A DNA stretch of 51,887 bases, from assembly GCF_001194135.2 (NCBI RefSeq), contig NC_068986.1, positions 81,910,916 to 81,962,802 on the forward strand, given 5' to 3'. Below are positions 1,099 through 49,690 of this stretch, one piece after another. The position numbers were made by a program, and so were the translations under genes. Numbering within the stretch: position 1 is the first letter of the stretch; every line of letters starts with the position of its first letter. The notes below the pieces were generated by a model. It saw only the letters and a list, made by a program, of their open reading frames with translations. It made no database searches and was not told the origin of the DNA. This DNA is from Octopus bimaculoides. Its lineage: Eukaryota.

Positions 1099-1134
1099 CA
1101 AGAGAACTCAGAGAGCTCAAACTTCCGCCAATGT
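1099..1134 (-). mobile_element. Unit D: ~36-bp 5'-end stub of a fourth array unit
   Basis: caaacttccgccaatgt resembles the 5' end of unit C (caaacctccgccaaggt, 2976-2992) and directly abuts the 3' end of unit C. Confidence 0.5.
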
Positions 1135-3003
1135 TTCTTTATTTTGGCACTACGGCTTCAACACAGAGGGGACACTACAAAGACAGACACAACACCACAG
1201 TGGGGACAAAAACATAAAACGAATGAAAATGAGATGTTATATAAAAATGAAAAATGAAATGGCTGTATGGGCCCCACTCCCATGCAGTATCATTTTACCG
1301 TTTATATAAACTATTTACAATCGTTCTATTATCTCATTGTTTTTTCTTAATCTCGTTTTTTTCCTCTTTTATTTTTAAATGAAACAATTTTACATTTTTC
1401 CTTCTTTCTTCAATAAAACAATAATTTTACTTACTTTTTCCTTTTTAACATCTCATGAAACGTTCTAAATCTTTTAGCTCCACTACAGGTGGCAATTCAT
1501 CAAACTCCACTAACACTCCTGACGGGTCAATCCCTTCTCCACACATGTCTTTTAGTCTATTGTAGGTGTTCTTGTCAACCACGGTGGTCTTCACATTCTC
1601 GGAATACACATCCATGGGCAACTTTACTCGTATAATATGTTTAAACTTTAATAATTTCTTTTCAGTTTCTTTGCTTTTTGTGTACGTCACACAATTCCAT
1701 CGAAATTTTCCTTTTCTTATTAGTTTTCTCTTTTCCTGCTCCGCTCTTGGTACCTTCTTCTTTTCTTTCACTACTCTGAACACTCTCTCCACTTGCGTTT
1801 CTAAATTTTCTTCCTCCACTGGAACAACCGGTGTCTTCACCAATATCTCTTCTTTATGCAACTCCTCCTTGAACACTTCAAGTTCCTTTTCGCTTATTTT
1901 TTCCACCACCATTTCGTCTTCCTTCTGGTCTCCTCCTTTTCCATATCTTCTTTCTTCTCTTTTTGCTGCTCTGGTGGAGAGCTCACTCTCCCACTTCTCT
2001 TTCTTTTTTTAAACACCGTGAACCCCTCCTCTGTTGCTTTCTCCTTTATCTCGACCTATAACACCTGGTCCGTGTTCTCCTTCCTCTCCGTCTGCTCTAT
2101 CTGTTGTTCCCTCTGGGGGGCATCTCGCCTTCATGCGGCCCTTTTCCCCACATGTATAACATATAGGTGGCCTGCCTTCCACCACCACTCTCAATCTTAC
2201 GTCATCGGGCAGCACTATCTCTTCGACAATTCTGCTTAGGTCTTCCACTGTTGCTTGAACGGTTAACTCTATTCCATATCCTCAGTAGTTAACTCTTTGG
2301 GTTCTTGTGGCCTTCAGTATCTTGGCCTCCTCATTCATGTCATACATTTTGGCTATCATCAACCATGCTTCGTTCAGCTCTGGGGGCACTTTGCCAACTC
2401 GCACCCTGGCCACACGTTTGCCACAGTACGATGGCGAAAGTACCCATTTTTTCGATCTTATTGCATCCGTGGAGTGCTTATTTGTTTCTTTTTCTGACGC
2501 AAAACGCACCTCCACAATAGCGTACTTTTCGCTCTTGTTACAATTTTGTGGTTAGTCTTTTTATAATCTTCAAACATTCTTCAATAGCCTCTATTGTCGC
2601 TATTTCTATTTTCCTTGTTGCTATCTTCTTGTCTTATATATCACTGTTCTTTTCATTACATTGGTTGTTAGTTCCACAGGCGGTGTTAATTTCAGTGTAT
2701 TCCCGTCTCTTTCCAGCAACTTCTCGCATTCCTTCATTTTTCGAGGTTCAACCTTTATTTCTCGTACCTCCAGCGTTTCCACGTCTATCCCTTTTCCAGT
2801 TGTAGCCGCATAACTGTAGCCAGCTGCTGGCGTTTTCTCCATTTCTCCCACAATGGGGAAAAACAATTCAAAATAGCACTAGCAACAATTTGAACAGTAA
2901 CAATTAATCAAACAAATATTTAACACTATGAATTATGTCTAACATGACAAAAAACAACTCAAACCACCTGTGACACAAACCTCCGCCAAGGTAACACCAA
3001 CTT
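1135..3003 (-). mobile_element. Unit C: ORF1-only (half-LINE-like) retroelement
   Basis: 5' motif cgccaaggt at 2984-2992; disrupted ORF 2842 to 1445; ~310-bp 3' UTR homologous to that of unit A, ending in AATAAA on the sense strand (gtgccaaAATAAAgaa). Confidence 0.75.
1445..2842 (-). pseudogene. Disrupted ORF1p-like nucleic-acid-binding protein (~465 codons; RRM-like region + CCHC knuckle)
   Basis: Joined from track ORFs 2621-2866, 2282-2515, 2009-2248 and 1445-1912: SYAATTGKG ... VEVRFASE ... RVRVGKVPPELNEAWL ... RVVVEGRPPICYTCGEKGRMKARCP. Architecture resembles Tx1/L1-clade ORF1. One in-frame TGA and about three frameshifts. Confidence 0.7.
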
Positions 3004-3568
3004 CCTTATTTCTTTAATTAGGCACAAGATCTCAGTAGAGAAGGGACAACACAAAAACAGACAAAACAATACATTGGGGTACATAGAAACACACATCGAA
3101 TGAATTATGGATATAATTACGTTCTTAATTCCTCTGAGGCACTCCTCGACCACCTCTACTGCAGCTATTTCCACTTATTTTGTTGCAATTTTTAATGTTC
3201 TGTATACAACTGTTACCTTCTTTGGTGGTGGTGGTGGGGGNNNNNNNNNNGGGTCAACCTTAGGCTATCTCCCTCCTTTTTCAATAAGTCATTGATTTAA
3301 AAAAATTCTTCTGTAATTTAATTTCTGTAACCTGCAGTCTCTCCGCTGACAGGCTTTTGCCAGTCACCGCAGCACTGGTGTACTTTCCATATTATTCACC
3401 ACTTCACCTATAAATGGGGAAGAAAATTTAAAAAAACGGTAACAAGTTCAACAAGTAACAACAGTACAACAATTCAATAATGACAGTTAAGCAAAAACGG
3501 TACTCACAAGAAGCGTTTACACTTCCAACTCACGAACACAAATAAATCACTAACGACAACGCTAACGT
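3004..3568 (-). mobile_element. Unit B: internally deleted copy of the same element
   Basis: 5' end and first ~90 codons (AAVTGKSLSAERLQVTEI ... LLKKEGDSLRLT ... VEIAAVEVVEECLRGIKN) fused at ~3115 to the last ~110 bp of the 3' UTR; contains a 10-N gap. Confidence 0.75.
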
Positions 3569-5358
3569 CCTTATTTCTTTAATTAGGCACAAGGCCTCAT
3601 AGAGAAGGGACAACACAAAAGATAGACAAAACAATACATTGGAGGTACATAAAAACATATAACGAATGAATTATGAATATAAATGAAAATGAAGATGGAA
3701 TGACTTACTTGCCCCACATAAGCAAGTAGTTTCATTTTACTGTTTTTAAATAAAGTGTGTGCTTATCAGTCTTGTATCTTGTTAGTTTTCCTTTTGTTTA
3801 AAAAATCCACACAAAGTCACACCATATGTTTCATCAAATCGTCAAATATTACCACTGGTGGCAATTCATCGTAACGAAATCGAATTCCTGTTATCACTTT
3901 CCTGTCACCAAATATTTCCTGCAACCTTCTTGCTCTGTCTTCTTCCAACATCACCGCTTTCTCATCTCGATTGAACTCACTGTCAGCCACTTTAACTCTT
4001 ATTACATGTTTCATTTCTGAAATTTTATTTTCTATCTCTACACTTTTTTTTGTAACTTATCATAGTTCTTTCATATTTCCCCTTCGGTGGTTCTCTCTGC
4101 TCTTCCTCACCACTCTCTTTCTCTGCTGCTGGTATTCTTGTTTCTGTCCTTCCGTCTCACATTCATGTCTCTTCTTCTTCTTCCGTCCTTCCTCCTCCTT
4201 ACTAGTTGAAGGCAACCGTCTTTGTGTTCGTTCCTCACTTGGCTCCTCATTCTTTCTTTCCTCGTTCTTGTTCTCTGCCTTTCTTTTCTTCTTCGGGCTT
4301 TTACGGGGAGATTCCACATAACTCCTCTTTCTTTCTACCATTGTATATTTTCCCTCCATTTCCTCCTCCGCTGTTGCGCCCTCTTCTTTCTCATGCTCCT
4401 TCTTCGCCTCCTCCTGGTCGTGTTTCTGGGGATACTTTGCTTTCATGTGCCCCCTTACTCCACATAAATAACATACCAGAGATCTCCCTTCCACCACGAT
4501 TCTTAATCTTGTCTCATCTGGTAGCACCAGCTCTTCCGCAATTTTGTGGAGGTCCGGCAGGCTGCTTTGGACCGACACCTCCAGTCCATACCCCCCAGCA
4601 ATTCACCTCTGTCGTTCTCGATATCTTCAATACCTGAGTGTCTTCCTCTGTGTTCTAGAGGATGGCTGCCATCAGTCACGCCTCATCAATTTCTGGGGGC
4701 ACTCTACCTAGTCTTACTCTGGCTGTACGTTTGCCACAGTAAGTAGGTAGCAGTGCCCACTCGGCTGATCTCAAAAGCACAGTGGAGCATTTCCTCGCTT
4801 CTTCTTCGCTTACGAAGCGTACCTCCACTGTGCAGTATTTCCTTCCTCTGGTGTAATATGTCGTTATATCCTTTATCTCTCGTAGACATTCCTCTACCGA
4901 TTCCTCCGCTGCTACTTCAACTTTTTTCGTTGTCACATTCAACGTTCTGTAAATAATTGTCCTTTTTTCAGTTTTTTCAAGTATTTCTTTAGGGGGCGTC
5001 AACCTCAGGCTGTCCCCCTCCTTCTTCAGCAAACCGTTATATTTTAAAAAATTCTTCTCCTTTAATTCGATTTCTTGGACCTGCAGTACCTCCACTGACA
5101 GGCCTTTGCCAGTCACCGCAGCGTAACTGCCCGCTGGTTTACTTTCCGTGACGGTATTATTCATAACTTCACCCATAAATGGGGAATTAAAAATAAAGCC
5201 AGTTAACAACAACAATTTCAACAATTCCAGTTAATAACAGTTCAACAATTCAGTAAATTAACAATACAATACAACAAAACTCACATGGAGCGAACACATT
5301 TCTAACATAGATCGGAATCAAATGATTTGAAAAACAACACTAACAACAACGCCAACGT
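3569..5358 (-). mobile_element. Unit A: ORF1-only (half-LINE-like) retroelement
   Basis: 5' motif cgccaacgt at 5350-5358; disrupted ORF 5176 to 3817; ~250-bp 3' UTR ending cctaATTAAAgaaataagg, which abuts the 5' motif of unit B. Confidence 0.75.
3817..5176 (-). pseudogene. Disrupted ORF1p-like protein (~450 codons)
   Basis: Track ORFs 4676-5224, 4060-4578 and 3817-4014: GSYAAVTGKG ... TVEVRFVSEEEA ... RVRLGRVPPEIDEA*L ... RIVVEGRSLVCYLCGVRGHMKAKYP. In-frame stops and a +1 G in the run at 4591-4596. Confidence 0.7.
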
Positions 5359-5700: not shown

Positions 5701-5939
5701 TCCTTTCTTTTATAGGCACAAGGCCCGAAATTTTGCGGGAGGGAGTAAGTCGATCACATCGACTACAGTACTTCACTAGTACTTAATTTATCGACCCCGA
5801 AAGGATGAAAGGCAAAGTCGACCTCGGCGGAATTTGATCTCAGAACGTAAAGGCAGACGAAATACTGCTAAGCATTTCGCCAGACGTGCTAACAGTTCTG
5901 CCAGCTCGCCGCCTTAGACAATGATGATGATGATAATAA

Positions 5940-6000
<61 letters not shown>

Positions 6001-6117
6001 CCTTTCTAGTATAGGCACAAGGCCTGGAATTTGTGGTGGGAGGGATAGTCGATTACATCGACCCAAGTACTTGACTAGTACTTATCGACCCCAAAAGGAT
6101 GAAAGGCGAAGTCGACC

Positions 6118-6154
<37 letters not shown>

Positions 6155-6650
6155 CCTTCCTATTATAGGCACGAGACCTGAAATTTTGGGGGACGAGACT
6201 AGTTAATTACATCAACCCCAGAGTTTCACTGGTACTTAATTTATCGACGCCGAAAGGATGAAAGGTAAAGTTGATTTCGGCGGAATTTGAACTGAGATCT
6301 TAAAGATGGACGAAATGCCGCTAAGCATTTTGCCCGGCGTTCTAACGATTCTGCCAGCTCGCCGCCTTCCAGTAATAATACTTGGAACTGCAAGAATTCC
6401 TCGCAGGGTTCTTGAAGTATGACCAGTAAACAAGTGTCACCTTAGTCTGCTGGTTTCACTTTCCATCATACCCAGCAAAATAAGCTGAGAGTTTTCATCA
6501 AATAATAATAATAGTGGTTTCAAATTTTGTCACAAGGGCAGCAAGACAAAGTCAACGTCAGTCGAATTTGAACTCAGAACAGACCGACGGGCGAAATACT
6601 GCTAAGCATTTCGTCCAGCGTGCTAACGATTTTCTGTCAGATCACCACAT
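5701..6650 (-). mobile_element. Cluster of four SINE-A copies (5701-5915 full, 6001-6118 truncated, 6154-6368 full, 6514-6650 internally deleted)
   Basis: tRNA-like head (ggcggcgagctggcagaa ... ttcaaattcc on the sense strand), GTCGAT-nnn-ATCGAC hairpin, ggccttgtgcc tail followed by (TTA)n. Confidence 0.9.
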
Positions 6651-8603: not shown

Positions 8604-9430
8604 TAAGGCGGCGAGCTGGTAGAATCGTTGGCGCGCCGGGCAATATGCTTAACGGAATTTCATCCATCTTTACGTTCCAAGTTCAAATTCCACCGAGGTC
8701 GACTTTGCCTTTCATCCTCTTGGGGTCGATAAAATAAATACCAGTTGAGTACTGGGGTCAATGTAACCGACTTACTCTCTCCCCCGAAATTGCTGGCGAG
8801 CTGGCAGGATCGTAAGCACGCCGGGCAAAATGCGTAGCCGCATTTCGTCCGTCTTGACGTTGTAACTTCAAATTCCGCCGAGATCAGCTTAACCTTTCAT
8901 CCTTTTGGGGTCAATAAAATAAGTACCAGTGAGTGCTGGGGGTCGATGTGATCGACTTACCCCTCCTCTAAAACTGGTAGCCGTCTGCTAAAGTTTGAAA
9001 CCAATATTATGTAAGAATTTAGCACACCGGGCGAAATGCTTACGTTCTGAGTTCAAATTCCGCCGAGGTTGACTTTGCTTTTCATCCTTTCGGGGTCGAT
9101 AAATTAAGTATCAGTTGTGTACCAGGGTCGATCTAATCGACTGGCCCCCTCCCCGAAAATTTCGGGCCTTGTGTCTAGAGTAGAAAAGAATATTATGTAA
9201 GAGTAAGGTGGAAAACCGACAGACTTGTGAGCACGCTGGTCAAAATGCTCAGAAGCATTTCTACCAGCTTTTATGTCCTGATTTCAAATTCTGCCGAGGT
9301 TGACTTTGCTTTTCCTCATTTAGGGTCGATAAAATGAAGAACTATTGAGCATTGAAGACGATGTGATCGACTATATCCTTCCACCACAAAAAAATTTCAG
9401 GCATTTTGCCTATAGTAGAAAGGAATATTA
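8604..9430 (+). mobile_element. Four head-to-tail SINE-A copies (~8604-8797, 8794-9004, 9016-9190, 9205-9430)
   Basis: Each has gttcaaattc(c)gccgaggt, ggggtcgataaa and a tail; tattatgtaag recurs at three junctions. Confidence 0.9.
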
Positions 9431-9990: not shown

Positions 9991-10230
9991 CGCGTGCGTG
10001 CGTGCGAGGTGTGTGCAATTGTGTGTGTGCATTTGTTTGTGTGTGTGTTATGTGCGTGTATGTGCGTGCATATCAAAGTGCGTGCTTTGAGAGTGTGTGA
10101 GTGCGGGTGAATGGGTATGAGAGTCTGTGTGTGTGTGTGTGTGTGTGTGCGCGCGCATGTATATGTAAGTATGTGCAAGTCAGAGTGCGTGCGCGTGTGT
10201 GTGGGAGAGTGCGTGCGCGTAAGCGAGAGT
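9940..10230. repeat. Imperfect (GT)n/(GC)n alternating purine-pyrimidine tract
   Basis: Read directly from the sequence. Confidence 0.85.
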
Positions 10231-10989
10231 GAAGGATATGAGTTAGTGGCGATATCAAGTTAATGGAGAGAAGGTGGTTGGAGAATTAGGTGAGAAATAA
10301 GGTTCTACAGGGAAATTATAGAGATGTGGGTGGTATATGAGAATTATCAACATATGCTGTTTTGAAGCTTACGTCATAGAACGCCTTACCACCAGCATGG
10401 TTAGAAATAAATGGAACCATTAGGATAAAAAGTCGATAGTTTTGCTAATGGTAAAACCAAAGAATATGACATTAACAAGAATCTGAAAGATGAGAGGCTA
10501 AGTGATAAAGAAGAAAAAGGTGTTTTGTGGATTTAATTCTGCTGAATCTGTACAGTTATTTTGCAAGGAGGAGTTATAGTGGGAAGAGATGATAATAATG
10601 TCCATACACATAGTGTGCAGGTATGCAAGTCTATACATATATTACTCATATATATATATATANNNNNNNNNNNNNNNNNNNNNNNNNNNNNNNNNNNNNN
10701 NNNNNNNNNNNNNNNNNNNNNNNNNNNNNNNNNNNNNNNNNNNNNNNNNNNNNNNNNNNNNNNNNNNNNNNNNNNNNNNNNNNNNNNNNNNNNNNNNNNN
10801 NNNNNNNNNNNNNNNNNNNNNNNNNNNNNNNNNNNNNNNNNNNNNNNNNNNNNNNNNNNNNNNNNNNNNNNNNNNNNNNNNNNNNNNNNNNNNNNNNNNN
10901 NNNNNNNNNNNNNNNNNNNNNNNNNNNNNNNNNNNNNNNNNNNNNNNNNNNNNNNNNNNNNNNNNNNNNNNNNNNNNNNNNNNNNNNNN

Positions 10990-11020
<31 letters not shown>

Positions 11021-11515
11021 TGTGTGTGTGTGTAAAATTCTTGACTTATTATAATTATCTCTGCTTTTGAAGGATGAATTATAATTACCAAAATAGCAAT
11101 TAAGACGAGTTCCACTTGAAAAGGGGAGGTAATCTCAAGAATCAAGGATTCCTTAAAGTTGATATGCCATTAAGGAAAAGGACAGGCTACTGTTTCGGGA
11201 TAAGAGGACAGTTACGAACACACATTTCTACCTCATTATGTATCATCAGCACAACAATTGTCCAATCCTAACAATAACCAAAGGACAAAGATTTATACAA
11301 AACAGACTAGAAAACTGTTACAGCCTTTGTAATTTGTGTCCTGTGGTATGTATTTGAACAACATAGACAAATATGCGTATATCAAATATGATAGAACATA
11401 AATTCTTGGTCTCTTAAACATATCTATCTCTACTAGAGAATGTATAATAATTGCCAAAGACCAGTTCCATTTGTGAAAGGGAGATAATAATAGATTTAAC
11501 GGTACCTTTTGTAAA

Positions 11516-11564
<49 letters not shown>

Positions 11565-12449
11565 CTATATGCATAGGAACACACGCATTTACATACATAC
11601 ATACATGCATACATACATACATACATACATACATACATACATACATACATACATACATACAGGTGCTACCCTGCATCGTCAGTCACTATTGAATTCTTCG
11701 TTTTTGGTTTTATATTGATTATAGCTACCTTCGTTATTACATAATTTTCACGTTACCATTTTGCTGAATCAGCCATTGATTCATAATGGTAAATATATAT
11801 ACCGAGAGTCAGAATTTGGCTAAACCATTCAGCGATGGAGTTGTCACCACTGAAGAGATTTAATTTTCAGCGAAACTCGAATTCGTGTATAGTGATCTCG
11901 CTCGCTGTGGTGGTTAGGTCCATTGTCAGAACAGAGACATGTGCTTCTTTGCGGCTAAGAGGTTTTAAAAAATTTTTTTTATACCTATTATTTGTAGCAA
12001 ATAATGATTTCAAAAGGATAGGTAATCCTGGCGGTTACCGTTTTTCTCTTAAATCAGTTTCATACGCCGGCTAACCACCGCGAATGTTGGTGACACCCGA
12101 GTTAGCAGTAAGCTAGTGATTTCCCTCACTTGGTAAATCCGATTCTCCTAGTCAGGACTGCATAGTTTCCGTAGAGTAAGTAGTAGTATTAATAATAACC
12201 AGGAGAACGGAGATTTTCCATATCTATAATTTTATTAAACAGTTATTCACAGCATTCTTATATAAATAATTTGACTTTGGTTTTTGTTTTGGTTGTTGTA
12301 ATTTTATACATGTTAGGTTTATTATATATATATATATATATTGTTCGTTTATATATTGGGGTTTATTATGTTTTTTGTAATTTGTTTAATATTGGTTACA
12401 AATTAACATTAATGTTTTTTACCGAAAAAGTATATATATATATATATAT

Positions 12450-12800
12450 ATATAAATTAACAGAATGAGATAAAAATCGAAGGCTGTGAAAGATTTTAGA
12501 ACATTTATAAATACGTCTTACAGCTATTTTCCTGGATATTTTATATATCCCTTCATCGGAGACGGTGCGAGAAAATGGTTAAGCAATAGTTATTCTAGAG
12601 AAGATATGAAATAGAGAGTGAAGTGGAGGAATGCAGGGATATTGTATCTGCAGTTCCATTATTTAAGCAGAATGGTATACGTTTCCTGTACCTTGTGTGT
12701 AAGTTCCAACAGTATCTAAAATTGGTCATTCCAAACATAGAGTTTGTAAACCGTGTTATTAGATTGAGGGTTTTTGAAGTGACTAAAATATACGGGATTG
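12450..12800 (-). mobile_element. Probable Penelope-like element pLTR/3' fragment ending near (TA)n
   Basis: Contains a degenerate minimal type I hammerhead (12514-12564) and has an inverted second copy at 13251-13331; both are known PLE traits. Confidence 0.5.
12514..12564 (-). ncRNA. Degenerate type I hammerhead ribozyme motif
   Basis: Sense strand: CGTCT | CCGATGA | ag GGATAT-ataaa-ATATCC ag | GAAA a TAGCTG TA | AGACG. Stem I is perfect and stem III near-palindromic; the core has a U4>C change. Confidence 0.6.
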
Positions 12801-13485
12801 CATGTAACTTACATAAGTTTTGTATGCGTATGTATGTGTTGATGTGTGTAAATGTCTGTATACATGTTTAATATATGCATAGATATACATCTCCACATAT
12901 ATATATTCTTCTACTACTAAGCACTGACCTGTCCTCTAAGCAACCTAACCTATATACCTAAATTCTTCATTCCACCATTTTGCTACCCCTACCCCCTCTC
13001 TCGGCCCTTCACTTAGGCTTTATCACTACATACCACACACTCCTCTACTCTACTTTTTACCCTCTCATCTCTTTACATGCTCATATCTTTCTCTCTCTCT
13101 CTCACCCTCACCTCCCTATTCCTTCTATCAATTTATCCTGACTGACCCCTGGCCAGTACACTTTCTCTCTTCATTTCTTTATTATCTCCCCGACTTTTTT
13201 CTCTCTTCTTGTTTTTTGATTTGACCTTACAAACGCATTCCTAACTTTTAAGTCACTTCAAAAAACCCTCGATCCAATAACACGGTTTACAAACTCTATG
13301 CTTGGGGTGACCAATTTTAAATACTATCGGANNNNNNNNNNNNNNNNNNNNNNNNNNNNNNNNNNNNNNNNNNNNNNNNNNNNNNNNNNNNNNNNNNNNN
13401 NNNNNNNNNNNNNNNNNNNNNNNNNNNNNNNNNNNNNNNNNNNNNNNNNNNNNNNNNNNNNNNNNNNNNNNNNNNNNNNNNNNNN

Positions 13486-13523
<38 letters not shown>

Positions 13524-14301
13524 CATGCGCATGGTGACAATAAAGTATCCATATATACTGTGTCCTCTTGCACTGTCGTTCACACCCCTCGATATTTCAA
13601 AGCTGTCAATAATTGTAAGATGATCAGGTGTAAATGAACTACGATCGATACAACCAGATGTGATACCAATGTGTGTTGGCCTACATGCGGTTTAGTTGGG
13701 TATTGGAGTCCTTGCTTCAGGTATGACATCAAATCAAATATGTTTTATTACTATGACGTCTATAAAGACGCTATGACGTCGTTAAAGTTTACCTAAAAGC
13801 AACAACGTCAGTAATAGATAATGTATTAATCGATTACTTAAAGGATATTTGAAGGTCAATCTTGACGGTTATTCACTAAAAGAATATATGCGGGTGAAAT
13901 TTATGTTTGATTACTGTTTGGTGGACCAACTGTTTCACAATATTTAGAATAGTTTAGCCGTTAAGTTTTTGTAATGGAATATATTGACAAGATTGAGATT
14001 ATAGGAAAGTGCGGCTACATTTTTATTGCTGAACAGAACTATCAACATATACCCTGCAGTGATAAGAAGTATTTTACACTTCAAGAACATTTTAATTTTT
14101 ATAACTAATTATAGTTAAGAAAGGAAGACAACTCCGGATTATAAATTTTTTAAAAATTAATTAAAAATAGAAATATTTAATAGAATTAATTGCAGTGGTT
14201 TAAGATTGAAAGAAATTCATGTTTTTAAATTGATGGCTATTATTGGATTTATATGATTTATATTTGGTATTGTGAACTAAGATACTGCATTCTTAAATAT
14301 T

Positions 14302-14507
14302 GGTTTTAAATTTTGGCACACGACCAACAATCTCAAGGGAGAGGTAAGTCAATAACATTGACCCCAGTGTTCAATTGGTACTTTACTTTAACGATCCCCA
14401 AAGGATGAAAGACAAAGTTGACTTCGGCAGCATTGGAACTCATAACGTAAAGACGGACAGAATGTCGATAAGTATTTTGTCAACGATTCTACTAATTTGG
14501 CGCCTTA
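14302..14507 (-). mobile_element. SINE-A, diverged near-full-length copy
   Basis: ggttttaaattttggcaca tail ... aaggatgaaagacaaagttgacttcggc ... ggcgcctta head. Confidence 0.8.
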
Positions 14508-15084
14508 CTACTTTCTTAAATATTGAGAGAGAAGGCTCGAATTACTGATATGGAAGTCAGTCATCGATAACAAGTTGGAGTCAAGGTATTTATAAGTTTT
14601 CTCTTCAATTTCTTTTCCGTCCACACTGAATCCTTGTTTAATCTTAACGGCTTTCATTAAACGAAGTCAACGTAGAAATCTGGGTTTCAACCTAAACAAA
14701 CCTGAACCAAATTTTCGTATAAAATATCGAACGACAGATTTACCAATTACTATTGAAATTTTAGTATTCGGTTCATGAAAACGTTTATCAGTTTAAAATA
14801 TCAGTTTAACAGCCAGAAAGATCAAATATCAAATAAATAAATAAATAAATAAATAAATAAGTAAATAAATAAACAAAACCATGAATCAAATATTTTGCAC
14901 TGTAGCCCATGCTATGAAGCCATTCCCACGATCTGTTGCAAAGCTTCTCAGGCTGGTGAAGTTGATGTAATTCATGTTGAGTATGATCTTCAGCAGGTTC
15001 ATGCTTTAATGGAAGATCCAAAAGGTTACCGTTTTGGGAAGGAGATAGGGGAAATTGAGTGAGAAACTATGAATGAGGAAAGGA

Positions 15085-15262
15085 AAGCTGGATATATGGA
15101 ATGGTAAAGCATCGAGTGTAAGAAGTATTACAGAGCCAAGTGTAAGAGGAAGTAGAAAGCTGAATGAAAGGTAAGGTACATAACTGAATGTGTGGAGTAG
15201 TACGTAACTGACTGTAAGGAATGGTACATATTTGAGTGAAAAAGGTGGTACATAGTTTTCTA
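15085..15262. repeat. Degenerate ~24-bp minisatellite, about 7-8 units
   Basis: The minus-strand frame shows 8-residue periodicity (LCTTFFTQ/ICTIPYSQ/LRTTPHIQ/LCTLPFIQ). Confidence 0.6.
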
Positions 15263-18524: not shown

Positions 18525-19015
18525 NNNNNNNNNNNNNNNNNNNNNNNNNNNNNNNNNNNNNNNNNNNNNNNNNNNNNNNNNNNNNNNNNNNNNNNNNNNN
18601 NNNNNNNNNNNNNNNNNNNNNNNNNNNNNNNNNNNNNNNNNNNNNNNNNNNNNNNNNNNNNNNNNNNNNNNNNNNNNNNNNNNNNNNNNNNNNNNNNNNN
18701 NNNNNNNNNNNNNNNNNNNNNNNNNNNNNNNNNNNNNNNNNNNNNNNNNNNNNNNNNNNNNNNNNNNNNNNNNNNNNNNNNNNNNNNNNNNNNNNNNNNN
18801 NNNNNNNNNNNNNNNNNNNNNNNNNNNNNNNNNNNNNNNNNNNNNNNNNNNNNNNNNNNNNNNNNNNNNNNNNNNNNNNNNNNNNNNNNNNNNNNNNNNN
18901 NNNNNNNNNNNNNNNNNNNNNNNNNNNNNNNNNNNNNNNNNNNNNNNNNNNNNNNNNNNNNNNNNNNNNNNNNNNNNNNNNNNNNNNNNNNNNNNNNNNN
19001 CATCAATTGCCAATC

Positions 19016-19092
<77 letters not shown>

Positions 19093-20723
19093 CAACAATA
19101 ATAATAATAATCTTTTTTCTGTTCTTAGTTTGCTTCTGCTTCTATGCCATTTTTCTTAGAGATAATCAGATTAATCTTTAAACGTTGCTTTCCATTTGTA
19201 GATTTATTCCATATTTCAAACATATTCTGTGTTGAACTTTGAACACTTTTTCTTTACACACAAGAATGATTCATCAAATATGATATCTGATTTATTTGTT
19301 TGTTTGTTTGTTTTGATGTTGCTTTATTTTTTCCTTTCTCTCTCTGTTACTAAATCTTCCTCGGTTTTCACTCTCCTACGTCACCTCTTCTCAAATACTA
19401 CGCTTTGCATATTTTTCATTTCATAAATTGCTTTCTACAGTTCTATTCCCTCCTCCTTCACTCACCCTTTTTTCCTTCCTTTCACCCCTATCCTGTCCCC
19501 TTCTTCAAGGTTTTTCTTTACTGATGTATGTGATACTTCAGCCCAAACTGTTGGTGCTAAACCATCTATGAGGCACAAATGTGCTCACACGCACCAGATT
19601 ACTCCGCTTGCCCACCACCATCGAAATATTTCTCCATTCCTTTATCGGAATCGTGACTTTCAGGGTTTCGATACCAGTTATGTCTCTTCAATTCCAACGA
19701 TTAATCTTTGAGTTTCTAATCTGATACTTAACCATAGAGTCAAGGTTACCCTAACCCCTAGCTGTCTAGGGTTAGCTCAGAGTTATTGCATCGGACACAA
19801 AAAAAGTAAAGCAACAAGCAGATATTTACATTACGTACGTATGTATGTATGTATGTATGTATGTATGTACACACTCATCCCCCCCCCCNNNNNNNNNNNN
19901 NNNNNNNNNNNNNNNNNNNNNNNNNNNNNNNNNNNNNNNNNNNNNNNNNNNNNNNNNNNNNNNNNNNNNNNNNNNNNNNNNNNNNNNNNNNNNNNNNNNN
20001 NNNNNNNNNNNNNNNNNNNNNNNNNNNNNNNNNNNNNNNNNNNNNNNNNNNNNNNNNNNNNNNNNNNNNNNNNNNNNNNNNNNNNNNNNNNNNNNNNNNN
20101 NNNNNNNNNNNNNNNNNNNNNNNNNNNNNNNNNNNNNNNNNNNNNNNNNNNNNNNNNNNNNNNNNNNNNNNNNNNNNNNNNNNNNNNNNNNNNNNNNNNN
20201 NNNNNNNNNNNNNNNNNNNNNNNNNNNNNNNNNNNNNNNNNNNNNNNNNNNNNNNNNNNNNNNNNNNNNNNNNNNNNNNNNNNNNNNNNNNNNNNNNNNN
20301 NNNNNNNNNNNNNNNNNNNNNNNNNNNNNNNNNNNNNNNNNNNNNNNNNNNNNNNNNNNNNNNNNNNNNNNNNNNNNNNNNNNNNNNNNNNNNNNNNNNN
20401 NNNNNNNNNNNNNNNNNNNNNNNNNNNNNNNNNNNNNNNNNNNNNNNNNNNNNNNNNNNNNNNNNNNNNNNNNNNNNNNNNNNNNNNNNNNNNNNNNNNN
20501 NNNNNNNNNNNNNNNNNNNNNNNNNNNNNNNNNNNNNNNNNNNNNNNNNNNNNNNNNNNNNNNNNNNNNNNNNNNNNNNNNNNNNNNNNNNNNNNNNNNN
20601 NNNNNNNNNNNNNNNNNNNNNNNNNNNNNNNNNNNNNNNNNNNNNNNNNNNNNNNNNNNNNNNNNNNNNNNNNNNNNNNNNNNNNNNNNNNNNNNNNNNN
20701 NNNNNNNNNNNNNNNNNNNNNNN

Positions 20724-22430: not shown

Positions 22431-23800
22431 GAATAATTAGAATTTAAAGGTGTCTGTTATGGGTTGCTGATGTAGAGAAACGATTTTAAGAAATAATGTG
22501 TTGAGCATTTTTAGAGAGTTTGTGGAAAGATGTGGGTTCAATAGAAAGAGAGGAACAGCAAGAATAAGTAAAATATATTAAAGAATAATAATATATTGTG
22601 TAAATGGCGGGAGAAACACACACAGAGACCCCCACACACAGACACCCACAGAGACAGACAGACAGACAGACATACAGACACACTAAGTAATATACAAATA
22701 GGAGCGCTTCTGTCTATGCGAATCTTGATATTTACATAAACTTACATCTCTAAACCATTTACTTCTGATGATGGACCTTTGTACCTGTAATATATGAAGG
22801 TGACTCCAGGTTTCCTTTCCGCGTTGTAAGAAGTTCTTCGTTATTTTTTTTTTGTATTTTACTTTTGTATCACAATTCTTCAAGCAAGCTACAACACTCT
22901 TCTAATTAATATACATTAGTCAAAAATTGCTGTACTATTTGTTGCGTGGCAGATATATAGTGTGTCCTGAATAAAAACACGAAAGGAACATGTTTTTCGT
23001 TTTATTGCGAGTATGTTCATTAGGACCGTATGTTCATTATTTGTTAGTAATATAAATGAAAACTGGATCTTTGGATTTCCTAGCAAAACATCCCTGTTTA
23101 TTGTCAAAGTTCCTTAATTACAGTTAGAGATGTCGCTGCCAAGTAAGCCACACGTATAGTAACGGGGTCTTTTGTCAAGTACCACCAGTTTGATTAACCT
23201 CATCCCCACTCCCTTAATGGGATACTTTTGGATAACCATGTGGGAAAGTGAACTCTCTCATCCACTATTTCTCGGCCTCGAAGAACATGCTTACAAATTT
23301 ACTGGATTGGGAGCACTTCTCTCCCCACCCTCACTTTCCTTTCCACATAGAACTTCAAAAAACAATCGATGAGGATTTGACTGAAAATACAAGCATACTT
23401 ATCCTTGTGTGCTTGACAATCTGGATCTCTTCTAGATAGATGGATGATTGGCGATTGATTATAGTAATCGTAGTTGTGATAACGGGAAAATACCTCTTTC
23501 TCCGTTTGCTTCTGTCGAATACCCCAATACCACGATGAAAAAAAAAAAAAAAGAAAAAAGAACCGGATGCCTTGGATTCGAGAAGTAACAAATACCAACC
23601 CAGAAGACCTACAGCAAAGAGGGGCAAACAGTTCCCTAGAATACAGGTTGGGTTAGTAACACATTGGTACAAACATTTCAACGAAAACGATCCCTTAAAA
23701 GAGTCAAATAAATAAACTTGGGATCAATCTAAAGGCGTCATTCCAATACATAAGCAAAATATAATAAGGATAATGATCATAACAGCACTTCAAACAAGGG

Positions 23801-28206: not shown

Positions 28207-28511
28207 NNNNNNNNNNNNNNNNNNNNNNNNNNNNNNNNNNNNNNNNNNNNNNNNNNNNNNNNNNNNNNNNNNNNNNNNNNNNNNNNNNNNNNNNNNNNNN
28301 NNNNNNNNNNNNNNNNNNNNNNNNNNNNNNNNNNNNNNNNNNNNNNNNNNNNNNNNNNNNNNNNNNNNNNNNNNNNNNNNNNNNNNNNNNNNNNNNNNNN
28401 NNNNNNNNNNNNNNNNNNNNNNNNNNNNNNNNNNNNNNNNNNNNNNNNNNNNNNNNNNNNNNNNNNNNNNNNNNNNNNNNNNNNNNNNNNNNNNNNNGGG
28501 GGGGGGGGGCG

Positions 28512-30990: not shown

Positions 30991-31198
30991 AGGGCAGTGA
31001 GCTGGTAGAATCGTTAGCACGGCGAGAAAAATACCGCATTTCGTTCGTCTTCACGTTCTGAGTTAAAGTTCCGCCGAGGTTGACTTTGTCTTTCATCACT
31101 TTCGAGGTCGATAAAATAAGTACAAATTGAACACTGGGATCGACTTAACCCTCACTCCACCGAAGTTACTGGCCTTGTGCTAAAATTTGAAACCAATA
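30991..31198 (+). mobile_element. SINE-A, full length
   Basis: gagctggtagaatcgttagcac ... ggccttgtgctaaaatttgaaacc. Confidence 0.85.
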
Positions 31199-34156: not shown

Positions 34157-34600
34157 GGAGACAAGTTGGCAGAATTGCTGGCATGCCGGACAAAATACTT
34201 AGCGGTATTTCTTATTGCTGGCAGAATCGTTAGCATGCCGGGCGAAATGCTTAGCGGTATTTCGTCTGCTGTTACGTTCTGAGTTCAAATTCCGCCGAGG
34301 TCGACTTTGCCTTTCATCCTTTCGGGGTCGATAAATTAAGTATCAGTTACGCACTGGGGTCGATGTAATCGACTTAATCCGTTCGTCTGTTCTTGTTTGT
34401 TCCCTCTATGTTTAGCCCCTTGTGGGCAATAACGAAATAGGTATTTCTTATTGCTCTTTACGTCCAAATGCCACCGAAGTCGACTTTGCCTTTCACCCTT
34501 TCGGGTCGATAGAGTAAAATACCAGTCAAGTACTAGGGTCGATGTAATCAACAAATCTCATTCTCCCAAAATTGCTGGCCTTGTGCCAAAATTAAAAAAA
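34157..34600 (+). mobile_element. Older SINE-A (34157-34219 and 34440-34600) interrupted by a younger variant-tail SINE-A (34220-34439)
   Basis: Perfect 16-bp TSD ggtatttcttattgct at 34204-34219 and 34440-34455. Confidence 0.9.
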
Positions 34601-36370: not shown

Positions 36371-36959
36371 GGGGCGAAGTGGGATAGAACGGGAAGAGAG
36401 AAAAAGACAGACAGACTGACAGAGAGTGTGCATTATAGCTTTTACTATGAGGAACTGATAGCTCTTACTATAATTAATTTTTCAGCCTTTCTTTTTCTAT
36501 GGATATGTTACTTTAAAGGAGGAGAGTACCCTGTATGTTATAAACAAAGACAAGGGAAAAATGAATCAGGATAGTCTTTACAATGTTAAGTCTATCTTGG
36601 CCCACTAAACAAGGATTTATCCCGGTTTCCACAGAGATTAAGCGACTGAAAATACAAGACTTCCTTCTGAATAGGACAGCAGCGCGTCACCGGGTTAATC
36701 CCTACCCCAGCTGCCATTGTTACACATTTTCAACTGAGTGAAGCAGTGTGAAATGAAGTGCCTTGCTCGAGTACACAATGAAAGAAATAAAAAATAATGC
36801 GCGCGCGCACATACCCCCCCCCNNNNNNNNNNNNNNNNNNNNNNNNNNNNNNNNNNNNNNNNNNNNNNNNNNNNNNNNNNNNNNNNNNNNNNNNNNNNNN
36901 NNNNNNNNNNNNNNNNNNNNNNNNNNNNNNNNNNNNNNNNNNNNNNNNCCCCCCCCCCA

Positions 36960-46710: not shown

Positions 46711-46924
46711 CCTTTCTACTATAAGCACAAGGCCTGAAATTTTGGAGAAGCGGGCCAGTCGATTACATCGACCAAAGTGCTTAACTGGTACTTATTTCAT
46801 CGACACCGAAAGGATGAAAGGCAAAGTCGACCTCGGCAGAATTTGAACTCAGAACGTAAACGCGGACGAAATACCGCAAAGCATTTTGCCCGGCGTGCTA
46901 ACGACTCCGCCAGCTCGTTACCTT
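46711..46924 (-). mobile_element. SINE-A, full length
   Basis: Flanked by attgtgatggaataat / attgtggtgaaataat (14 of 16 identical), a probable TSD. Confidence 0.9.
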
Positions 46925-49227: not shown

Positions 49228-49690
49228 GAGTGAGAGAGCAGTGCATGCCATCAAAGTGACACTGGGGTAAAATATACAAAGCCCAATATACCCATCATGA
49301 CTACCCGTCTGATAAGGGTACACCAGGCAGATGCATCACAACCATATGTGCGCGACATGGTGATCTCATATCAAGATAAACAGTGGGGCCCAGTTAGAAT
49401 TTTTTTCAGGTCGAGTAGCCCATCCCGCTCAAAAGGTCCCTGAATAAGATTTGTTTAAGGATGTTGAGCAAAACACCCATGCTTCCAAAGGTGAATTATT
49501 CAAANNNNNNNNNNAAGGGACATGCTCAACTGGTTAAGGTCAAACAACTGACAAGCAAATCTGTGGTATTAAGCAGAATATTTGCTGTAGCCCATCTTTT
49601 ATACCAAGACAAAACAACGTACATGATAACACTTCCAATCAATTAAGATCAGAAGCCATGAGAGCCACTGCCTGGTACTGCATCAGGGCA
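49228..49690. mobile_element. Second copy of the (ATT)n-flanked ~560-bp repeat, in opposite orientation
   Basis: Reverse complement of 515-1072; internal 10-N gap and a short deletion. Confidence 0.85.

What the first reader, a model, noticed from the sequence alone, without database searches (positions are those of the whole stretch)
1099..5358. Head-to-tail array of deeply diverged ORF1-only ('half-LINE') retroelements
Seen: units A (3569-5358), B (3004-3568) and C (1135-3003), plus a 5' stub D, lie gap-free in one orientation. A and C both run 5' UTR, ~450-codon ORF, homologous 250-310-bp 3' UTR, poly(A) signal, leaving no room for ORF2. They are only 32/51 identical in the best-conserved block, and many differences are conservative. 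Known: RRM + CCHC with N-terminal SYAA and xVPP motifs is typical of Tx1/L1-clade ORF1p; ORF1-only non-autonomous lineages exist (HAL1; Drosophila HeT-A, which forms arrays of this same polarity); Tx1 elements are often target-specific. Inference: loss of ORF2 predates the A/C split, so this lineage propagated under selection as distinct subfamilies that accumulated at one site, rather than arising by local duplication of a dead copy. I know of no such family described in cephalopods. The site is interstitial, with no telomeric repeats.
Basis: partly seen in the sequence, partly recalled or inferred. Interest (0 to 1): 0.85.

Follow-up and report, generated by a model that had tools for sequence, protein, structure and literature searches.

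The report
ORF1-only octopus LINE copies in tandem
Window 1099-5358 holds three dead, head-to-tail copies of an octopod jumping gene that kept only the first of a LINE's two genes; the family is real, spread under selection and shares its 3' end with a complete LINE and with the abundant octopus SINE, a notable but not unprecedented kind of element.

Summary
On the minus strand, units A (5358-3569), B (3568-3004) and C (3003-1135) and a 36-nt stub D abut without spacers. A and C are 5'UTR, ~450-codon ORF, 3'UTR, with no ORF2. Both ORFs are broken, and B is an internally deleted A-type copy.

The ORF is a genuine LINE ORF1. In Argonauta hians and Octopus sinensis a homologous ORF1 sits directly upstream of an ORF2 with APE endonuclease, RT and zf-RVT, whose best PDB match is human L1 ORF2p. 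That LINE, the ORF1-only units and the octopus tRNA-derived SINE share one 3' tail, GGCC(C)TTGTG(G)CC-AAUAAAGAAA.

ORF1-only units recur in O. bimaculoides, O. sinensis and O. vulgaris. dN/dS between copies is 0.10-0.38. Mixed A/C arrays with the same precise tail|5'UTR junction occur at other loci with unrelated flanks, so they are not local duplications.

How the arrays form is unresolved. I favour homology-guided insertion upstream of a resident copy. Arrays have not been seen in a long-read assembly. Overall this is a HAL1-like element in a new phylum and LINE lineage: a new variant of a known kind, of moderate interest.

The parts
3569..5358 (-). Unit A: A-type ORF1-only element, full length, dead
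   Evidence: Self-BLAST and three-frame translation. tblastn with the reconstructed A protein covers 5176-3820.
5177..5358 (-). Unit A 5'UTR: T-rich (48% T, 11% C), built of GTT/ATT-like repeats; starts ACGTTGGCGTTGTTGTTAGTG
   Evidence: TRF finds a period-24 repeat at 5217-5263.
3817..5176 (-). Unit A ORF1 remnant (~452 codons). In-frame stops at 4678, 4657, 4062 and 4059; frameshift near 4596-4592; terminal TGA at 3819-3817.
   Evidence: The N-terminal 166 aa are 34% identical to the Argonauta LINE ORF1, E 4e-24.
4432..4473 (-). Unit A CCHC zinc knuckle, degenerate (CYLCGVRGHMKAKY; the last Cys has become Tyr)
   Evidence: Pfam zf-CCHC scores only 13 bits, below the cut-off. A profile hit to retroviral nucleocapsid knuckles has E 0.018. 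Coordinates were worked out by hand from the translation.
3569..3816 (-). Unit A 3'UTR. The last 28 nt, GGCCTTGTGCCTAATTAAAGAAATAAGG (3596-3569), are the family tail: a small hairpin followed by AUUAAA.
3004..3568 (-). Unit B: A-type copy with an internal deletion. It keeps the 5'UTR, the first ~100 codons and the last ~113 nt; the deletion joint is near 3123-3117.
3241..3250 (.). Assembly gap inside unit B, next to a (CCA)n run. Its flanks are collinear with unit A.
1135..3003 (-). Unit C: C-type ORF1-only element, full length, dead
   Evidence: It is 71-75% identical at the DNA level to C-type units of O. bimaculoides and O. sinensis.
1445..2842 (-). Unit C ORF1 remnant (~465 codons). Two frameshifts between about 2625 and 2550; stops at 2284 and 2011; terminal TAA at 1447-1445. 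Degenerate knuckle CYTCGEKGRMKARC at 2161-2120.
   Evidence: dN/dS against O. bimaculoides C-type copies is 0.14-0.22. The knuckle coordinates were worked out by hand from the translation.
1135..1444 (-). Unit C 3'UTR, ending ...AAGCCGTAGTGCCAAAATAAAGAAAC, with AATAAA at 1145-1140
1099..1134 (-). Stub D: the first ~36 nt of a C-like 5'UTR after C's tail. It runs on into (TTG)2(TTA)8 at 1098-1069.
   Evidence: Comparable stubs end the arrays or copies in L003 and L004.
5701..6370 (-). Context: three tRNA-derived SINE copies head to tail with (ATT)n/(ATC)n spacers. They carry the same 3' tail, GGCCTTGTGCCTATAAAAGAAAGG.

Best explanation
Window 1099-5358 is a head-to-tail cluster of three dead copies, plus a 5'UTR stub, of a non-autonomous, ORF1-only derivative of an octopod L1/Tx1-like LINE.

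The autonomous relatives carry ORF1, ORF2 (APE endonuclease, RT, zf-RVT) and a ~225-270 nt 3'UTR (measured in L007 and L006). The 3'UTR ends in a small hairpin followed by AAUAAAGAAA. The A-type and C-type elements keep the 5'UTR, the whole ORF1 and that 3' end, but have no ORF2.

Inferred steps:
- They are copied in trans by the LINE's ORF2 protein, which recognises the shared 3' tail. The abundant tRNA-derived octopus SINE carries the same tail and would be copied the same way.
- Their own ORF1 protein was kept by selection while the lineage split into subfamilies. Presumably an RNA that encodes its own chaperone or coat competes better for ORF2p.

Clustering is a property of the family rather than of this locus. 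The machinery inserts at simple (ATT)n-type repeats in one fixed orientation. The array-forming subfamilies have GTT/ATT-like 5'UTRs and abut precisely (tail|5'UTR).

My preferred mechanism for the precise junction is inference only, at about 0.35. The template RNA reads a few dozen nt into the next unit's 5'UTR, which makes it terminally redundant. That 3' stub then anneals to the 5' end of a resident copy, so the new unit is laid down exactly upstream of it. The founding copy keeps its stub at the 3' end of the array.
For: Shown by tool results:

- Anatomy of A, B, C and D.
- Homologues occur only in octopods. The search for homologous proteins returned 24 proteins, all named ones from O. 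bimaculoides or O. sinensis and none with an RT domain. The profile search found 471 representative clusters with E<=1e-3; every named one is from Octopus spp. or Argonauta hians.
- Intact ORFs exist: P0026 (453 aa, zf-CCHC 22 bits, above the cut-off) and P0029 (404 aa).
- L007 (Argonauta hians) is a complete LINE: ORF1 of 527 aa abutting ORF2, with a perfect 16-bp TSD.
- L009 (O. sinensis) has ORF1 and ORF2 and is flanked on both sides by (ATT)n.
- L004 unit 4 carries Exo_endo_phos (47 bits) and zf-RVT (39 bits) behind an ORF1-like N-terminus.
- The Argonauta ORF2 matches human L1 ORF2p over the endonuclease and RT, E 4e-42.
- Window A against the Argonauta ORF1: E 4e-24. Window A against the O. 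sinensis LINE ORF1: 35% over 216 aa, E 1.5e-40.
- The tail is shared by ORF1-only units, three ORF2-bearing LINE copies and the SINEs. The tail motif has 12 hits in the window against 0.48 expected. A 4-bp hairpin sits at the same place in 11 of 15 tails, with different stem sequences.
- dN/dS is 0.10-0.38.
- Arrays with the same precise junction occur in L001 (2 units) and L004 (C, C, A, LINE). Flanks are unrelated between loci, and units within an array are no more alike than units at different loci.
- 5'UTR-like stubs sit at the 3' ends of the window array, L003 and L004.
- The only 5'-truncated array unit seen (L001a) is the 5'-most of its array.
- 5'UTRs rich in GTT/ATT occur only in the array-forming subfamilies.

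From the literature:
- HAL1 is an ORF1-only L1 derivative (PMC5753468).
- Tx1-clade LINEs target microsatellites, and their SINEs form tandem insertions (PMC4494074).
- O. vulgaris has recently active L1-Tx1 families (PMC13282606).
Against: - Mobilisation in trans, any function of the ORF1 protein and the array mechanism are all inferred.
- No TSD could be found around the window array, so a single insertion event and several events cannot be told apart.
- Arrays were seen only in the window and in the gap-rich O. bimaculoides assembly. The four loci fetched from long-read assemblies (L003, L008, L009, L010) hold solo copies.
- The RRM assignment is weak. The AF2 model reaches pLDDT 70-80 only for residues 71-147, and the Foldseek hits to RRM domains have E 0.01-0.3.
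- The C-terminal domain of the ORF1-only protein does not match the autonomous ORF1 significantly.
- The window copies themselves are pseudogenes, so selection acted on their ancestors, not on them.
- The dN/dS values come from alignments guided by protein similarity and from a simple NG86 count.
Confidence: 0.8

Rival explanations
1. The arrays arise by repeated insertion into one and the same target site, each insertion duplicating a ~13-20 nt target (t1-d-U-d-U-d-t2). On this reading the 'stub' and the first nucleotides of each 5'UTR are sandwiched TSDs, not part of the element.
For: - Tandem insertions 'sandwiching a TSD' are described for SINEs mobilised by target-specific Tx1 LINEs (PMC4494074).
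- Solo relatives make direct repeats of 16-18 nt (L007 perfect, L008 with 2 differences).
- All four positions in L004 share GTT[GA]A[GA][CT]AGCAGT.
Against: - The same start sequence (GTTGAGCAGCAG..., ACGTTGGCG...) follows unrelated upstream flanks at L002, L004 and the window. It therefore behaves as part of the element, unless the target is a specific 13-mer.
- Stubs extend 36-90 nt into 5'UTR-like sequence, longer than the TSDs seen.
Confidence: 0.25
2. The arrays move as arrays. Read-through transcripts spanning several units, or end-to-end template jumps of the RT between RNAs, are reverse-transcribed in a single event, so the whole window cluster is one insertion.
For: - The junctions are precise.
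- The only 5'-truncated array unit seen (L001a) is the 5'-most of its array.
- The stub is explained as 3' read-through from a source array.
- P0002 and L004 show the same C-to-A neighbour order.
Against: - No TSD brackets the window array.
- Unit order differs between loci: A-A'-C in the window, C-C-A-LINE in L004.
- Units of one array differ in how decayed they are, which fits different ages better.
Confidence: 0.2
3. It is a host gene family, a domesticated gag-like RRM-CCHC protein, arranged as a tandem gene cluster. The window copies would be its decayed paralogues.
For: - Purifying selection.
- Intact ORFs annotated as genes, P0026 and P0029.
Against: - Each unit ends in the LINE/SINE 3' tail.
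- Copies are dispersed with unrelated flanks and show 5' truncation.
- There are hundreds of diverged copies.
- An ORF2-bearing relative sits in the same array.
- No introns were seen: each unit reads as one uninterrupted ORF between its UTRs.
Confidence: 0.05
4. It is a local tandem duplication (macrosatellite) of one dead copy, or an assembly artefact that joins similar repeats.
For: - The units abut with no spacer.
- A and B share a 90%-identical 113-nt 3' end that could mislead a short-read assembler.
- The window has 10 gaps.
Against: - A and C share only 35% amino-acid identity, with saturated synonymous sites.
- C-type units at different loci are as similar as units in one array.
- The same junction sequence recurs inside contiguous sequence at L001 and twice at L004.
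- The arrays start at the element's 5' end rather than at an arbitrary phase.
Confidence: 0.05

Closest known systems
HAL1 ('half-L1') of mammals
   Same: - A non-autonomous LINE derivative that encodes only ORF1p and keeps the partner's ends.
- It propagated as families of its own (PMC5753468).
   Different: - The octopod family belongs to a different phylum and a different LINE lineage. Its ORF1 is of the RRM-like + CCHC kind, not the coiled-coil/RRM/CTD kind of mammalian L1 (the mammalian architecture is from my own knowledge).
- Its 3' end is a specific tail with (ATT)n rather than poly(A).
- It forms precise head-to-tail arrays.
- It is not a member of HAL1 proper.
Tx1-clade target-specific LINEs (Kibi, Koshi, Keno, crocodilian Tx1) and their SINEs
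   Same: - APE-type LINEs that insert into microsatellites or multicopy sequences.
- Partner SINEs share the LINE tail and are often found as tandem insertions (PMC4494074).
- The octopod LINE L009 sits inside (ATT)n, and the SINEs are chained with (ATT)n spacers.
   Different: - Placement of the RT in the Tx1 clade was not tested here.
- An (ATT)n preference rests on one LINE copy and on the SINE flanks.
- ORF1-only derivatives are not mentioned in the Tx1 and octopus repeat papers I could read.
Drosophila HeT-A (with TART/TAHRE)
   Same: - A Gag/ORF1-only element with zinc knuckles that depends on a partner's RT.
- It is found in same-orientation head-to-tail arrays mixed with ORF2-bearing relatives.
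- Its transcripts overlap the neighbouring element. (HeT-A biology is from my own knowledge.)
   Different: - HeT-A is telomeric and joined through oligo(A) to variably truncated neighbours. Its redundancy comes from a 3' promoter.
- The octopod arrays are interstitial and the junctions are exact, without A-runs.
- Here the repeated piece is the 5'UTR start.
Stringent LINE/SINE pairs sharing a 3' stem-loop tail (e.g. eel UnaL2/UnaSINE1)
   Same: A conserved 3' tail with a small hairpin is shared by the LINE and its non-autonomous passengers. (The UnaL2 example is from my own knowledge.)
   Different: - The hairpin here has only 3-5 bp and is weakly supported.
- Recognition by the RT is not tested.

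Membership tests
Non-LTR retrotransposon ORF1 protein | A homologous ORF lies directly upstream of an endonuclease-RT ORF2 in autonomous elements | tested here: met
   - L007: ORF1 9998-11581 abuts ORF2 11578-15029.
- L009: ORF1 10001-11803, then ORF2 11982-15107.
- Window A against these ORF1s: E 4e-24 and 1.5e-40.
Non-LTR retrotransposon ORF1 protein | CCHC zinc knuckle | tested here: inconclusive
   The knuckle passes the Pfam cut-off in relative P0026 (22 against 20.8 bits). In window A it scores 13 bits, and one ligand residue is mutated in both A and C.
Non-LTR retrotransposon ORF1 protein | RRM fold | tested here: inconclusive
   The AF2 model shows beta-alpha-beta-beta-alpha-beta topology at pLDDT 70-80 for residues 71-147. 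The Foldseek top hits are mostly RRM domains, but with E 0.01-0.3. No Pfam RRM hit.
L1/Tx1 group of LINEs | ORF2 with an N-terminal APE endonuclease, an RT and a C-terminal zf-RVT (CCHC) motif | tested here: met
   This holds for the ORF2-bearing relatives, not for the window units: Exo_endo_phos 47 bits and zf-RVT 39 bits; RVT_1 + zf-RVT in P0022 and P0024; human L1 ORF2p is the best PDB match, E 4e-42.
L1/Tx1 group of LINEs | RT groups phylogenetically with Tx1 rather than with L1 or other clades | not tested
O. vulgaris is reported to hold active 'L1-Tx1' families (PMC13282606).
L1/Tx1 group of LINEs | Target-specific insertion (typical of Tx1) | tested here: inconclusive
   L009 is flanked by (ATT)22 and (ATT)7, L006 ends in (ATT)>=29, and the SINEs are followed by (ATT)n. 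But L007 and L008 sit at ordinary sites with 16-18-nt repeats.
ORF1-only ('half-LINE') non-autonomous retroelement | ORF1 present, ORF2 absent, same architecture in many copies | tested here: met
   The architecture is seen in window A and C, directly at the 3' end of L001a, L004 u1, L004 u2, L003 and L008, and consistently in three further units whose 3' ends are hidden. There are no ORF2 hits in these units.
ORF1-only ('half-LINE') non-autonomous retroelement | 3' end shared with an autonomous partner | tested here: met
   Tail alignment A4, and the tails of L006, L007 and L009.
ORF1-only ('half-LINE') non-autonomous retroelement | ORF under purifying selection during amplification | tested here: met
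   dN/dS 0.10-0.38 in 30 pairwise comparisons of C-type segments. The method is simple (NG86 on protein-guided alignments).
ORF1-only ('half-LINE') non-autonomous retroelement | Mobilised in trans by the partner's ORF2p | not testable with these tools
   This needs a retrotransposition assay.
HeT-A-type telomeric array | Located at chromosome ends or among telomeric repeats | tested here: not met
   No telomeric repeats were found in the 51.9-kb window (TRF). The related arrays lie 0.9-51 Mb inside chromosomes.
HeT-A-type telomeric array | Units joined through oligo(A) to 5'-truncated neighbours | tested here: not met
   The junctions are exact tail|full 5'UTR without A-runs.

The most novel reading that the evidence does not exclude
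The ORF1-only elements may be terminally redundant retroelements. Their RNA would carry the first 20-90 nt of a 5'UTR again at its 3' end, and they would use that repeat to integrate by homology exactly upstream of resident copies. That would be a self-targeting way of building interstitial arrays, a mirror image of HeT-A/TART and reminiscent of the retroviral R. The family keeps its own ORF1 protein under selection while borrowing ORF2p from an (ATT)n-targeting L1/Tx1-like LINE, the same LINE that would also drive the major octopus SINE expansion.
Probability: 0.25. Interest if true: 0.7.

Novelty: new variant of a known kind. Interest (0 to 1): 0.5.

Why it matters
Octopus genomes are unusually rich in SINEs and LINEs, and retroelement activity in the octopus brain is under active study. 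This finding bears on that in four ways.

- It links three repeat classes to one 3' tail: a complete L1/Tx1-like LINE, the abundant tRNA-derived SINE and a previously undescribed ORF1-only lineage. That names a candidate driver for the SINE expansion.
- ORF1-only LINE derivatives kept under selection are otherwise known mainly from mammals (HAL1) and from Drosophila telomeres (HeT-A). A third, independent case would allow a test of why a parasite-of-a-parasite retains ORF1p.
- The exact head-to-tail junctions and terminal stubs are a concrete, testable puzzle about how the RT of this lineage starts and finishes.
- On the practical side, dozens of annotated octopus 'genes' are fragments or fusions of this ORF1, including models drawn across arrays, and they should be masked.

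Tried and rejected
- Pfam on the reconstructed A and C proteins gave only a sub-threshold zf-CCHC hit.
- A PDB sequence search with the ORF1 profile hit only retroviral zinc knuckles.
- P0001 and P0002 are not on record, so no DNA could be fetched for them.
- The first protein search was swamped by the Lys/Glu-rich linker and returned 4 hits. It was repeated with an alignment lacking the linker.
- The TSD search around the window array found nothing better than chance: 1759 of 2000 shuffles did as well. An 11-mer near the L004 array is not adjacent to the element ends.
- A MAFFT consensus of C-type units gave a frame-shifted consensus. I dropped it in favour of pairwise, protein-guided codon comparisons.
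- The AF2 model of P0005 (RRM2, knuckle, C-terminal domain) had pLDDT 47 and was not used for fold search.
- Foldseek on the N-terminal model gave no hit at E<=0.001.
- The C-terminal domain against the autonomous ORF1 C-terminus was not significant.
- L010 (O. vulgaris) holds a solo copy of a third subfamily with no recognisable tail within 4 kb, so it was uninformative.
- ARAGORN finds no tRNA in the SINE heads.
- The octopus brain LINE paper concerns RTE elements, not this family.
- One script call returned no answer and was repeated.
- Considered and rejected: Penelope-like pseudo-LTR arrays, because there is no GIY-YIG/RT ORF; and a telomeric array, because there are no telomeric repeats.

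Full report
**1. What is in the window**

The elements lie on the minus strand. Self-BLAST and three-frame translation confirm three units that abut without spacers:
- A, 5358-3569
- B, 3568-3004
- C, 3003-1135
- a 36-nt piece D, 1134-1099, which runs on into (TTG)2(TTA)8

A and C share one plan: a 160-180 nt 5'UTR, a ~450-465-codon reading frame and a 250-310 nt 3'UTR with an ATTAAA or AATAAA hexamer. There is no room for a second ORF.
- A and C are 34.7% identical at the protein level over ~467 positions.
- At the DNA level only ~305 nt (68%) and the last ~180 nt (73%) align.
- The best 51-residue block is 33/51 identical.

Neither ORF is open.
- A has four premature stops and one frameshift.
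- C has two frameshifts and at least two further stops.
- Each has lost one ligand residue of the CCHC knuckle.

B is an A-type copy with a ~1.2-kb internal deletion.

The assembly gap 3241-3250 lies inside B, next to a (CCA)n run. Its flanks are collinear with A (30 nt against 30 nt), so continuity is plausible. No unit junction touches a gap.

**2. What the ORF is**

Pfam and PDB sequence searches recognise only the zinc knuckle. Protein searches find relatives only in octopods.
- The search for homologous proteins returned 24 proteins, all named ones from O. bimaculoides or O. sinensis, none with an RT domain.
- A profile search of the representative library gave 471 clusters at E<=1e-3. 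Every named one is from Octopus bimaculoides, O. sinensis, O. vulgaris or Argonauta hians.
- Intact ORFs exist: P0026 (453 aa, zf-CCHC above the Pfam cut-off) and P0029 (404 aa).

The decisive context comes from fetched loci.
- In Argonauta hians (L007) a 527-aa homologue is followed immediately by an ORF2 with APE endonuclease, RT and a zf-RVT C-terminus. The element is solo, ~5.45 kb, with a perfect 16-bp target-site duplication.
- In O. sinensis (L009) a 623-aa homologue is followed by the same kind of ORF2, which is defective in that copy.
- Window A's N-terminal ORF matches the Argonauta ORF1 at 34% over 148 aa, E 4e-24, including the SYAAV and VPPEID motifs. It matches the O. sinensis ORF1 at 35% over 216 aa.
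- The Argonauta ORF2 matches human L1 ORF2p over endonuclease plus RT (E 4e-42), but matches R2 proteins only over the RT.

The ORF is therefore a LINE ORF1 of an L1/Tx1-like family. Placement within Tx1 was not tested.

An AF2 model of the N-terminal half gives a beta-alpha-beta-beta-alpha-beta domain at moderate confidence, with RRM domains as the best but non-significant fold matches. The RRM label is plausible but not shown.

**3. One 3' tail for three kinds of element**

The last ~25 nt compare as follows:

| Element | 3' end |
|---|---|
| Units A and B | GGCCTTGTGCCTAATTAAAGAAATAAGG |
| C-type units | GGCCGTAGTGCCAAATAAAGAAAAC |
| LINE, L006 | GGGCCCTTGTGGCCAATAAAAGAAATC |
| LINE, L007 | GTGCCCTTGTGGCGAATAAAGAAATG |
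| LINE, L009 | CAGCCCTTGTGGCCAATAAAAAGAATTA |
| tRNA-derived SINE in the window | GGGCCTTGTGCCTATAAAAGAAAGG |

- The 13-mer occurs 12 times in the window against 0.48 expected.
- In 11 of 15 tails the minimum-energy fold is a 4-bp hairpin at the same position. The stems differ in sequence (AGGC/GCCU, UGGC/GCCA, UCCUA/UAGGA, GGCC/GGCC), which suggests conservation of structure. The energies are modest.

By the established logic of LINE/SINE partnerships, this tail is the likely recognition site for the LINE's RT. I infer that both the ORF1-only units and the SINE are mobilised in trans.

**4. A lineage, not debris**

- The same ORF1-stop-3'UTR-tail structure is seen directly at the 3' end of four further units: L001a, L004 u1, L004 u2 and L003.
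- Three more units are ORF1-type copies whose 3' ends are hidden by gaps or an interruption: L001b, L002 and L004 u3.
- A third subfamily in the gap-free O. vulgaris assembly (L008) has the same structure.
- Flanks of the loci are unrelated, so the copies were dispersed by transposition.
- Pairwise dN/dS among C-type copies is 0.10-0.38, at dS 0.18-0.75.
- Window C against the O. bimaculoides copies gives 0.14-0.22.
- Between A and C, synonymous sites are saturated (pS 0.68-0.85) while pN is 0.32-0.42.

So the ORF was under purifying selection while the ORF2-less lineage diversified. Most of the 3'UTR aligns between A and C, which fits one ancestral ORF2 loss but does not prove it.

**5. Arrays are a family trait**

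- L001 holds two C-type units.
- L004 holds C, C, an A-type unit and then an ORF2-bearing relative. That relative has Exo_endo_phos at 47 bits and zf-RVT at 39 bits, with a deletion fusing ORF1 to the endonuclease.
- The junction is always exact...AAATAAAGAAAAC|GTTGAGCAGCAG... It lies inside contiguous sequence.
- The first unit of the L004 array begins at that same nucleotide, after unrelated DNA.
- The one truncated unit seen (L001a) is the 5'-most of its array.
- Units within an array are no more alike than units at different loci.
- The gene model P0002 joins a C-type C-terminus to an A-type unit, pointing to a further array.

Each array or solo copy of these subfamilies ends with a piece of 5'UTR after the last tail: 36 to ~70 nt in the window, ~36 nt in L003 and ~90 nt in L004.

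The ORF2-bearing L009 is flanked on both sides by (ATT)n. The window's SINEs form a same-orientation chain with (ATT)n/(ATC)n spacers. The 5'UTRs of the array-forming subfamilies are T-rich, C-poor and GTT/ATT-like, unlike those of L007, L008 and L009.

**6. Mechanism**

Shown:
- the identity of the elements
- the shared tail
- selection on the ORF
- recurrent precise arrays with terminal stubs

Inferred:
- mobilisation in trans
- how the arrays form

I favour, at about 0.35, terminally redundant template RNAs (unit plus the start of the next unit's 5'UTR). Their 3' stub would anneal at the 5' end of a resident copy and place the new unit exactly upstream. This accounts for:
- the exact junctions
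- the missing spacers
- stubs found only at array 3' ends
- the one truncation seen, which lies at an array's 5' end
- the mixed composition of arrays

Two rivals stand:
- Sequential same-site insertion sandwiching a TSD, as described for Tx1-mobilised SINEs (PMC4494074).
- Retrotransposition of multi-unit RNAs, or template jumping between RNAs.

No TSD brackets the window array. The loci fetched from long-read assemblies held solo copies, so arrays still need confirmation by long reads.

**7. Comparison with what is known, and verdict**

The closest analogue is mammalian HAL1, an ORF1-only L1 derivative that arose several times (PMC5753468).
- The octopod family is not a member of HAL1.
- It derives from a different LINE lineage, with a different ORF1 type and a specific tail instead of poly(A).

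It resembles HeT-A in being Gag-only and arrayed. It fails the telomeric and oligo(A)-junction criteria.

Target preference and tandem insertion fit Tx1-clade behaviour (PMC4494074). L1-Tx1 families are reported as recently active in O. vulgaris (PMC13282606), though that paper does not mention ORF1-only forms.

I rate this a real, well-supported feature. It is a new variant of a known kind, of moderate interest. The array-forming mechanism is the part that could turn out to be new.

Noticed in passing
window 5701-6370 (minus strand); further copies near 360-490, 8610-8960, 9100-9412, 31100-31183, 34500-34589 and 46722-46900: Three tRNA-derived SINE copies lie head to tail, separated only by (ATT)12 and (ATC/ATT)n. 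Most SINE copies in the window are followed by at least two ATT repeats, and TRF reports a tandem SINE dimer at 8610-8960. ARAGORN calls no tRNA in the SINE heads.
   Followed up: partly
window 23239-23388 (minus strand): A decayed fragment of the C-terminal end of the partner LINE's ORF2 (45% identical to P0024 residues 523-569, E 0.004). No recognisable tail lies downstream.
   Followed up: partly
L004 14690-18070: The ORF2-bearing LINE copy at the 3' end of the array has an internal deletion that fuses the first RRM-like domain of ORF1 to the start of the endonuclease. After its tail comes a ~90-nt stretch of degenerate GTTGAGTAGCAG-like repeats resembling the C-type 5'UTR.
   Followed up: partly
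L009 9720-9778 and 15348-15380: The O. sinensis LINE copy is flanked by (ATT)22 upstream and (ATT)7(ATC)n downstream. This suggests insertion into (ATT)n microsatellites. It rests on a single copy.
   Followed up: partly
proteins P0025, P0054, P0107, P0159, P0018 and P0002: Annotated octopus proteins fuse this ORF1 to WD40, LDL-receptor-A, astacin, C2H2 or ISXO2-transposase domains. P0002 joins a C-type C-terminus to an A-type unit. These are most likely gene models drawn across repeats, though exonisation is not excluded.
   Followed up: no
5'UTRs: window 5358-5177, 3568-3412 and 3003-2843; L004 9329-9488, 11114-11274 and 13006-13155: The 5'UTRs of the array-forming subfamilies are 43-48% T and 7-14% C, and look like degenerate GTT/ATT/GTTGAG repeats. 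The 5'UTRs of solo L008 and of the ORF2-bearing L007 and L009 do not.
   Followed up: partly
L007 1321-4558: Upstream of the Argonauta LINE lie long ORFs with gag-like CCHC motifs and an integrase-like region, probably an LTR retrotransposon. No domain search was run on them.
   Followed up: no
window gaps 10663-10989, 13332-13485, 18525-19000, 19889-20723, 28207-28497, 36823-36948, 37705-37888, 49505-49514 and 50132-51129: At least seven of the nine other assembly gaps sit at or beside di- to tetranucleotide microsatellites, such as (TG)n, (GA)n, (TATG)n and (AT)n. The gaps probably mark unassembled simple repeats.
   Followed up: no
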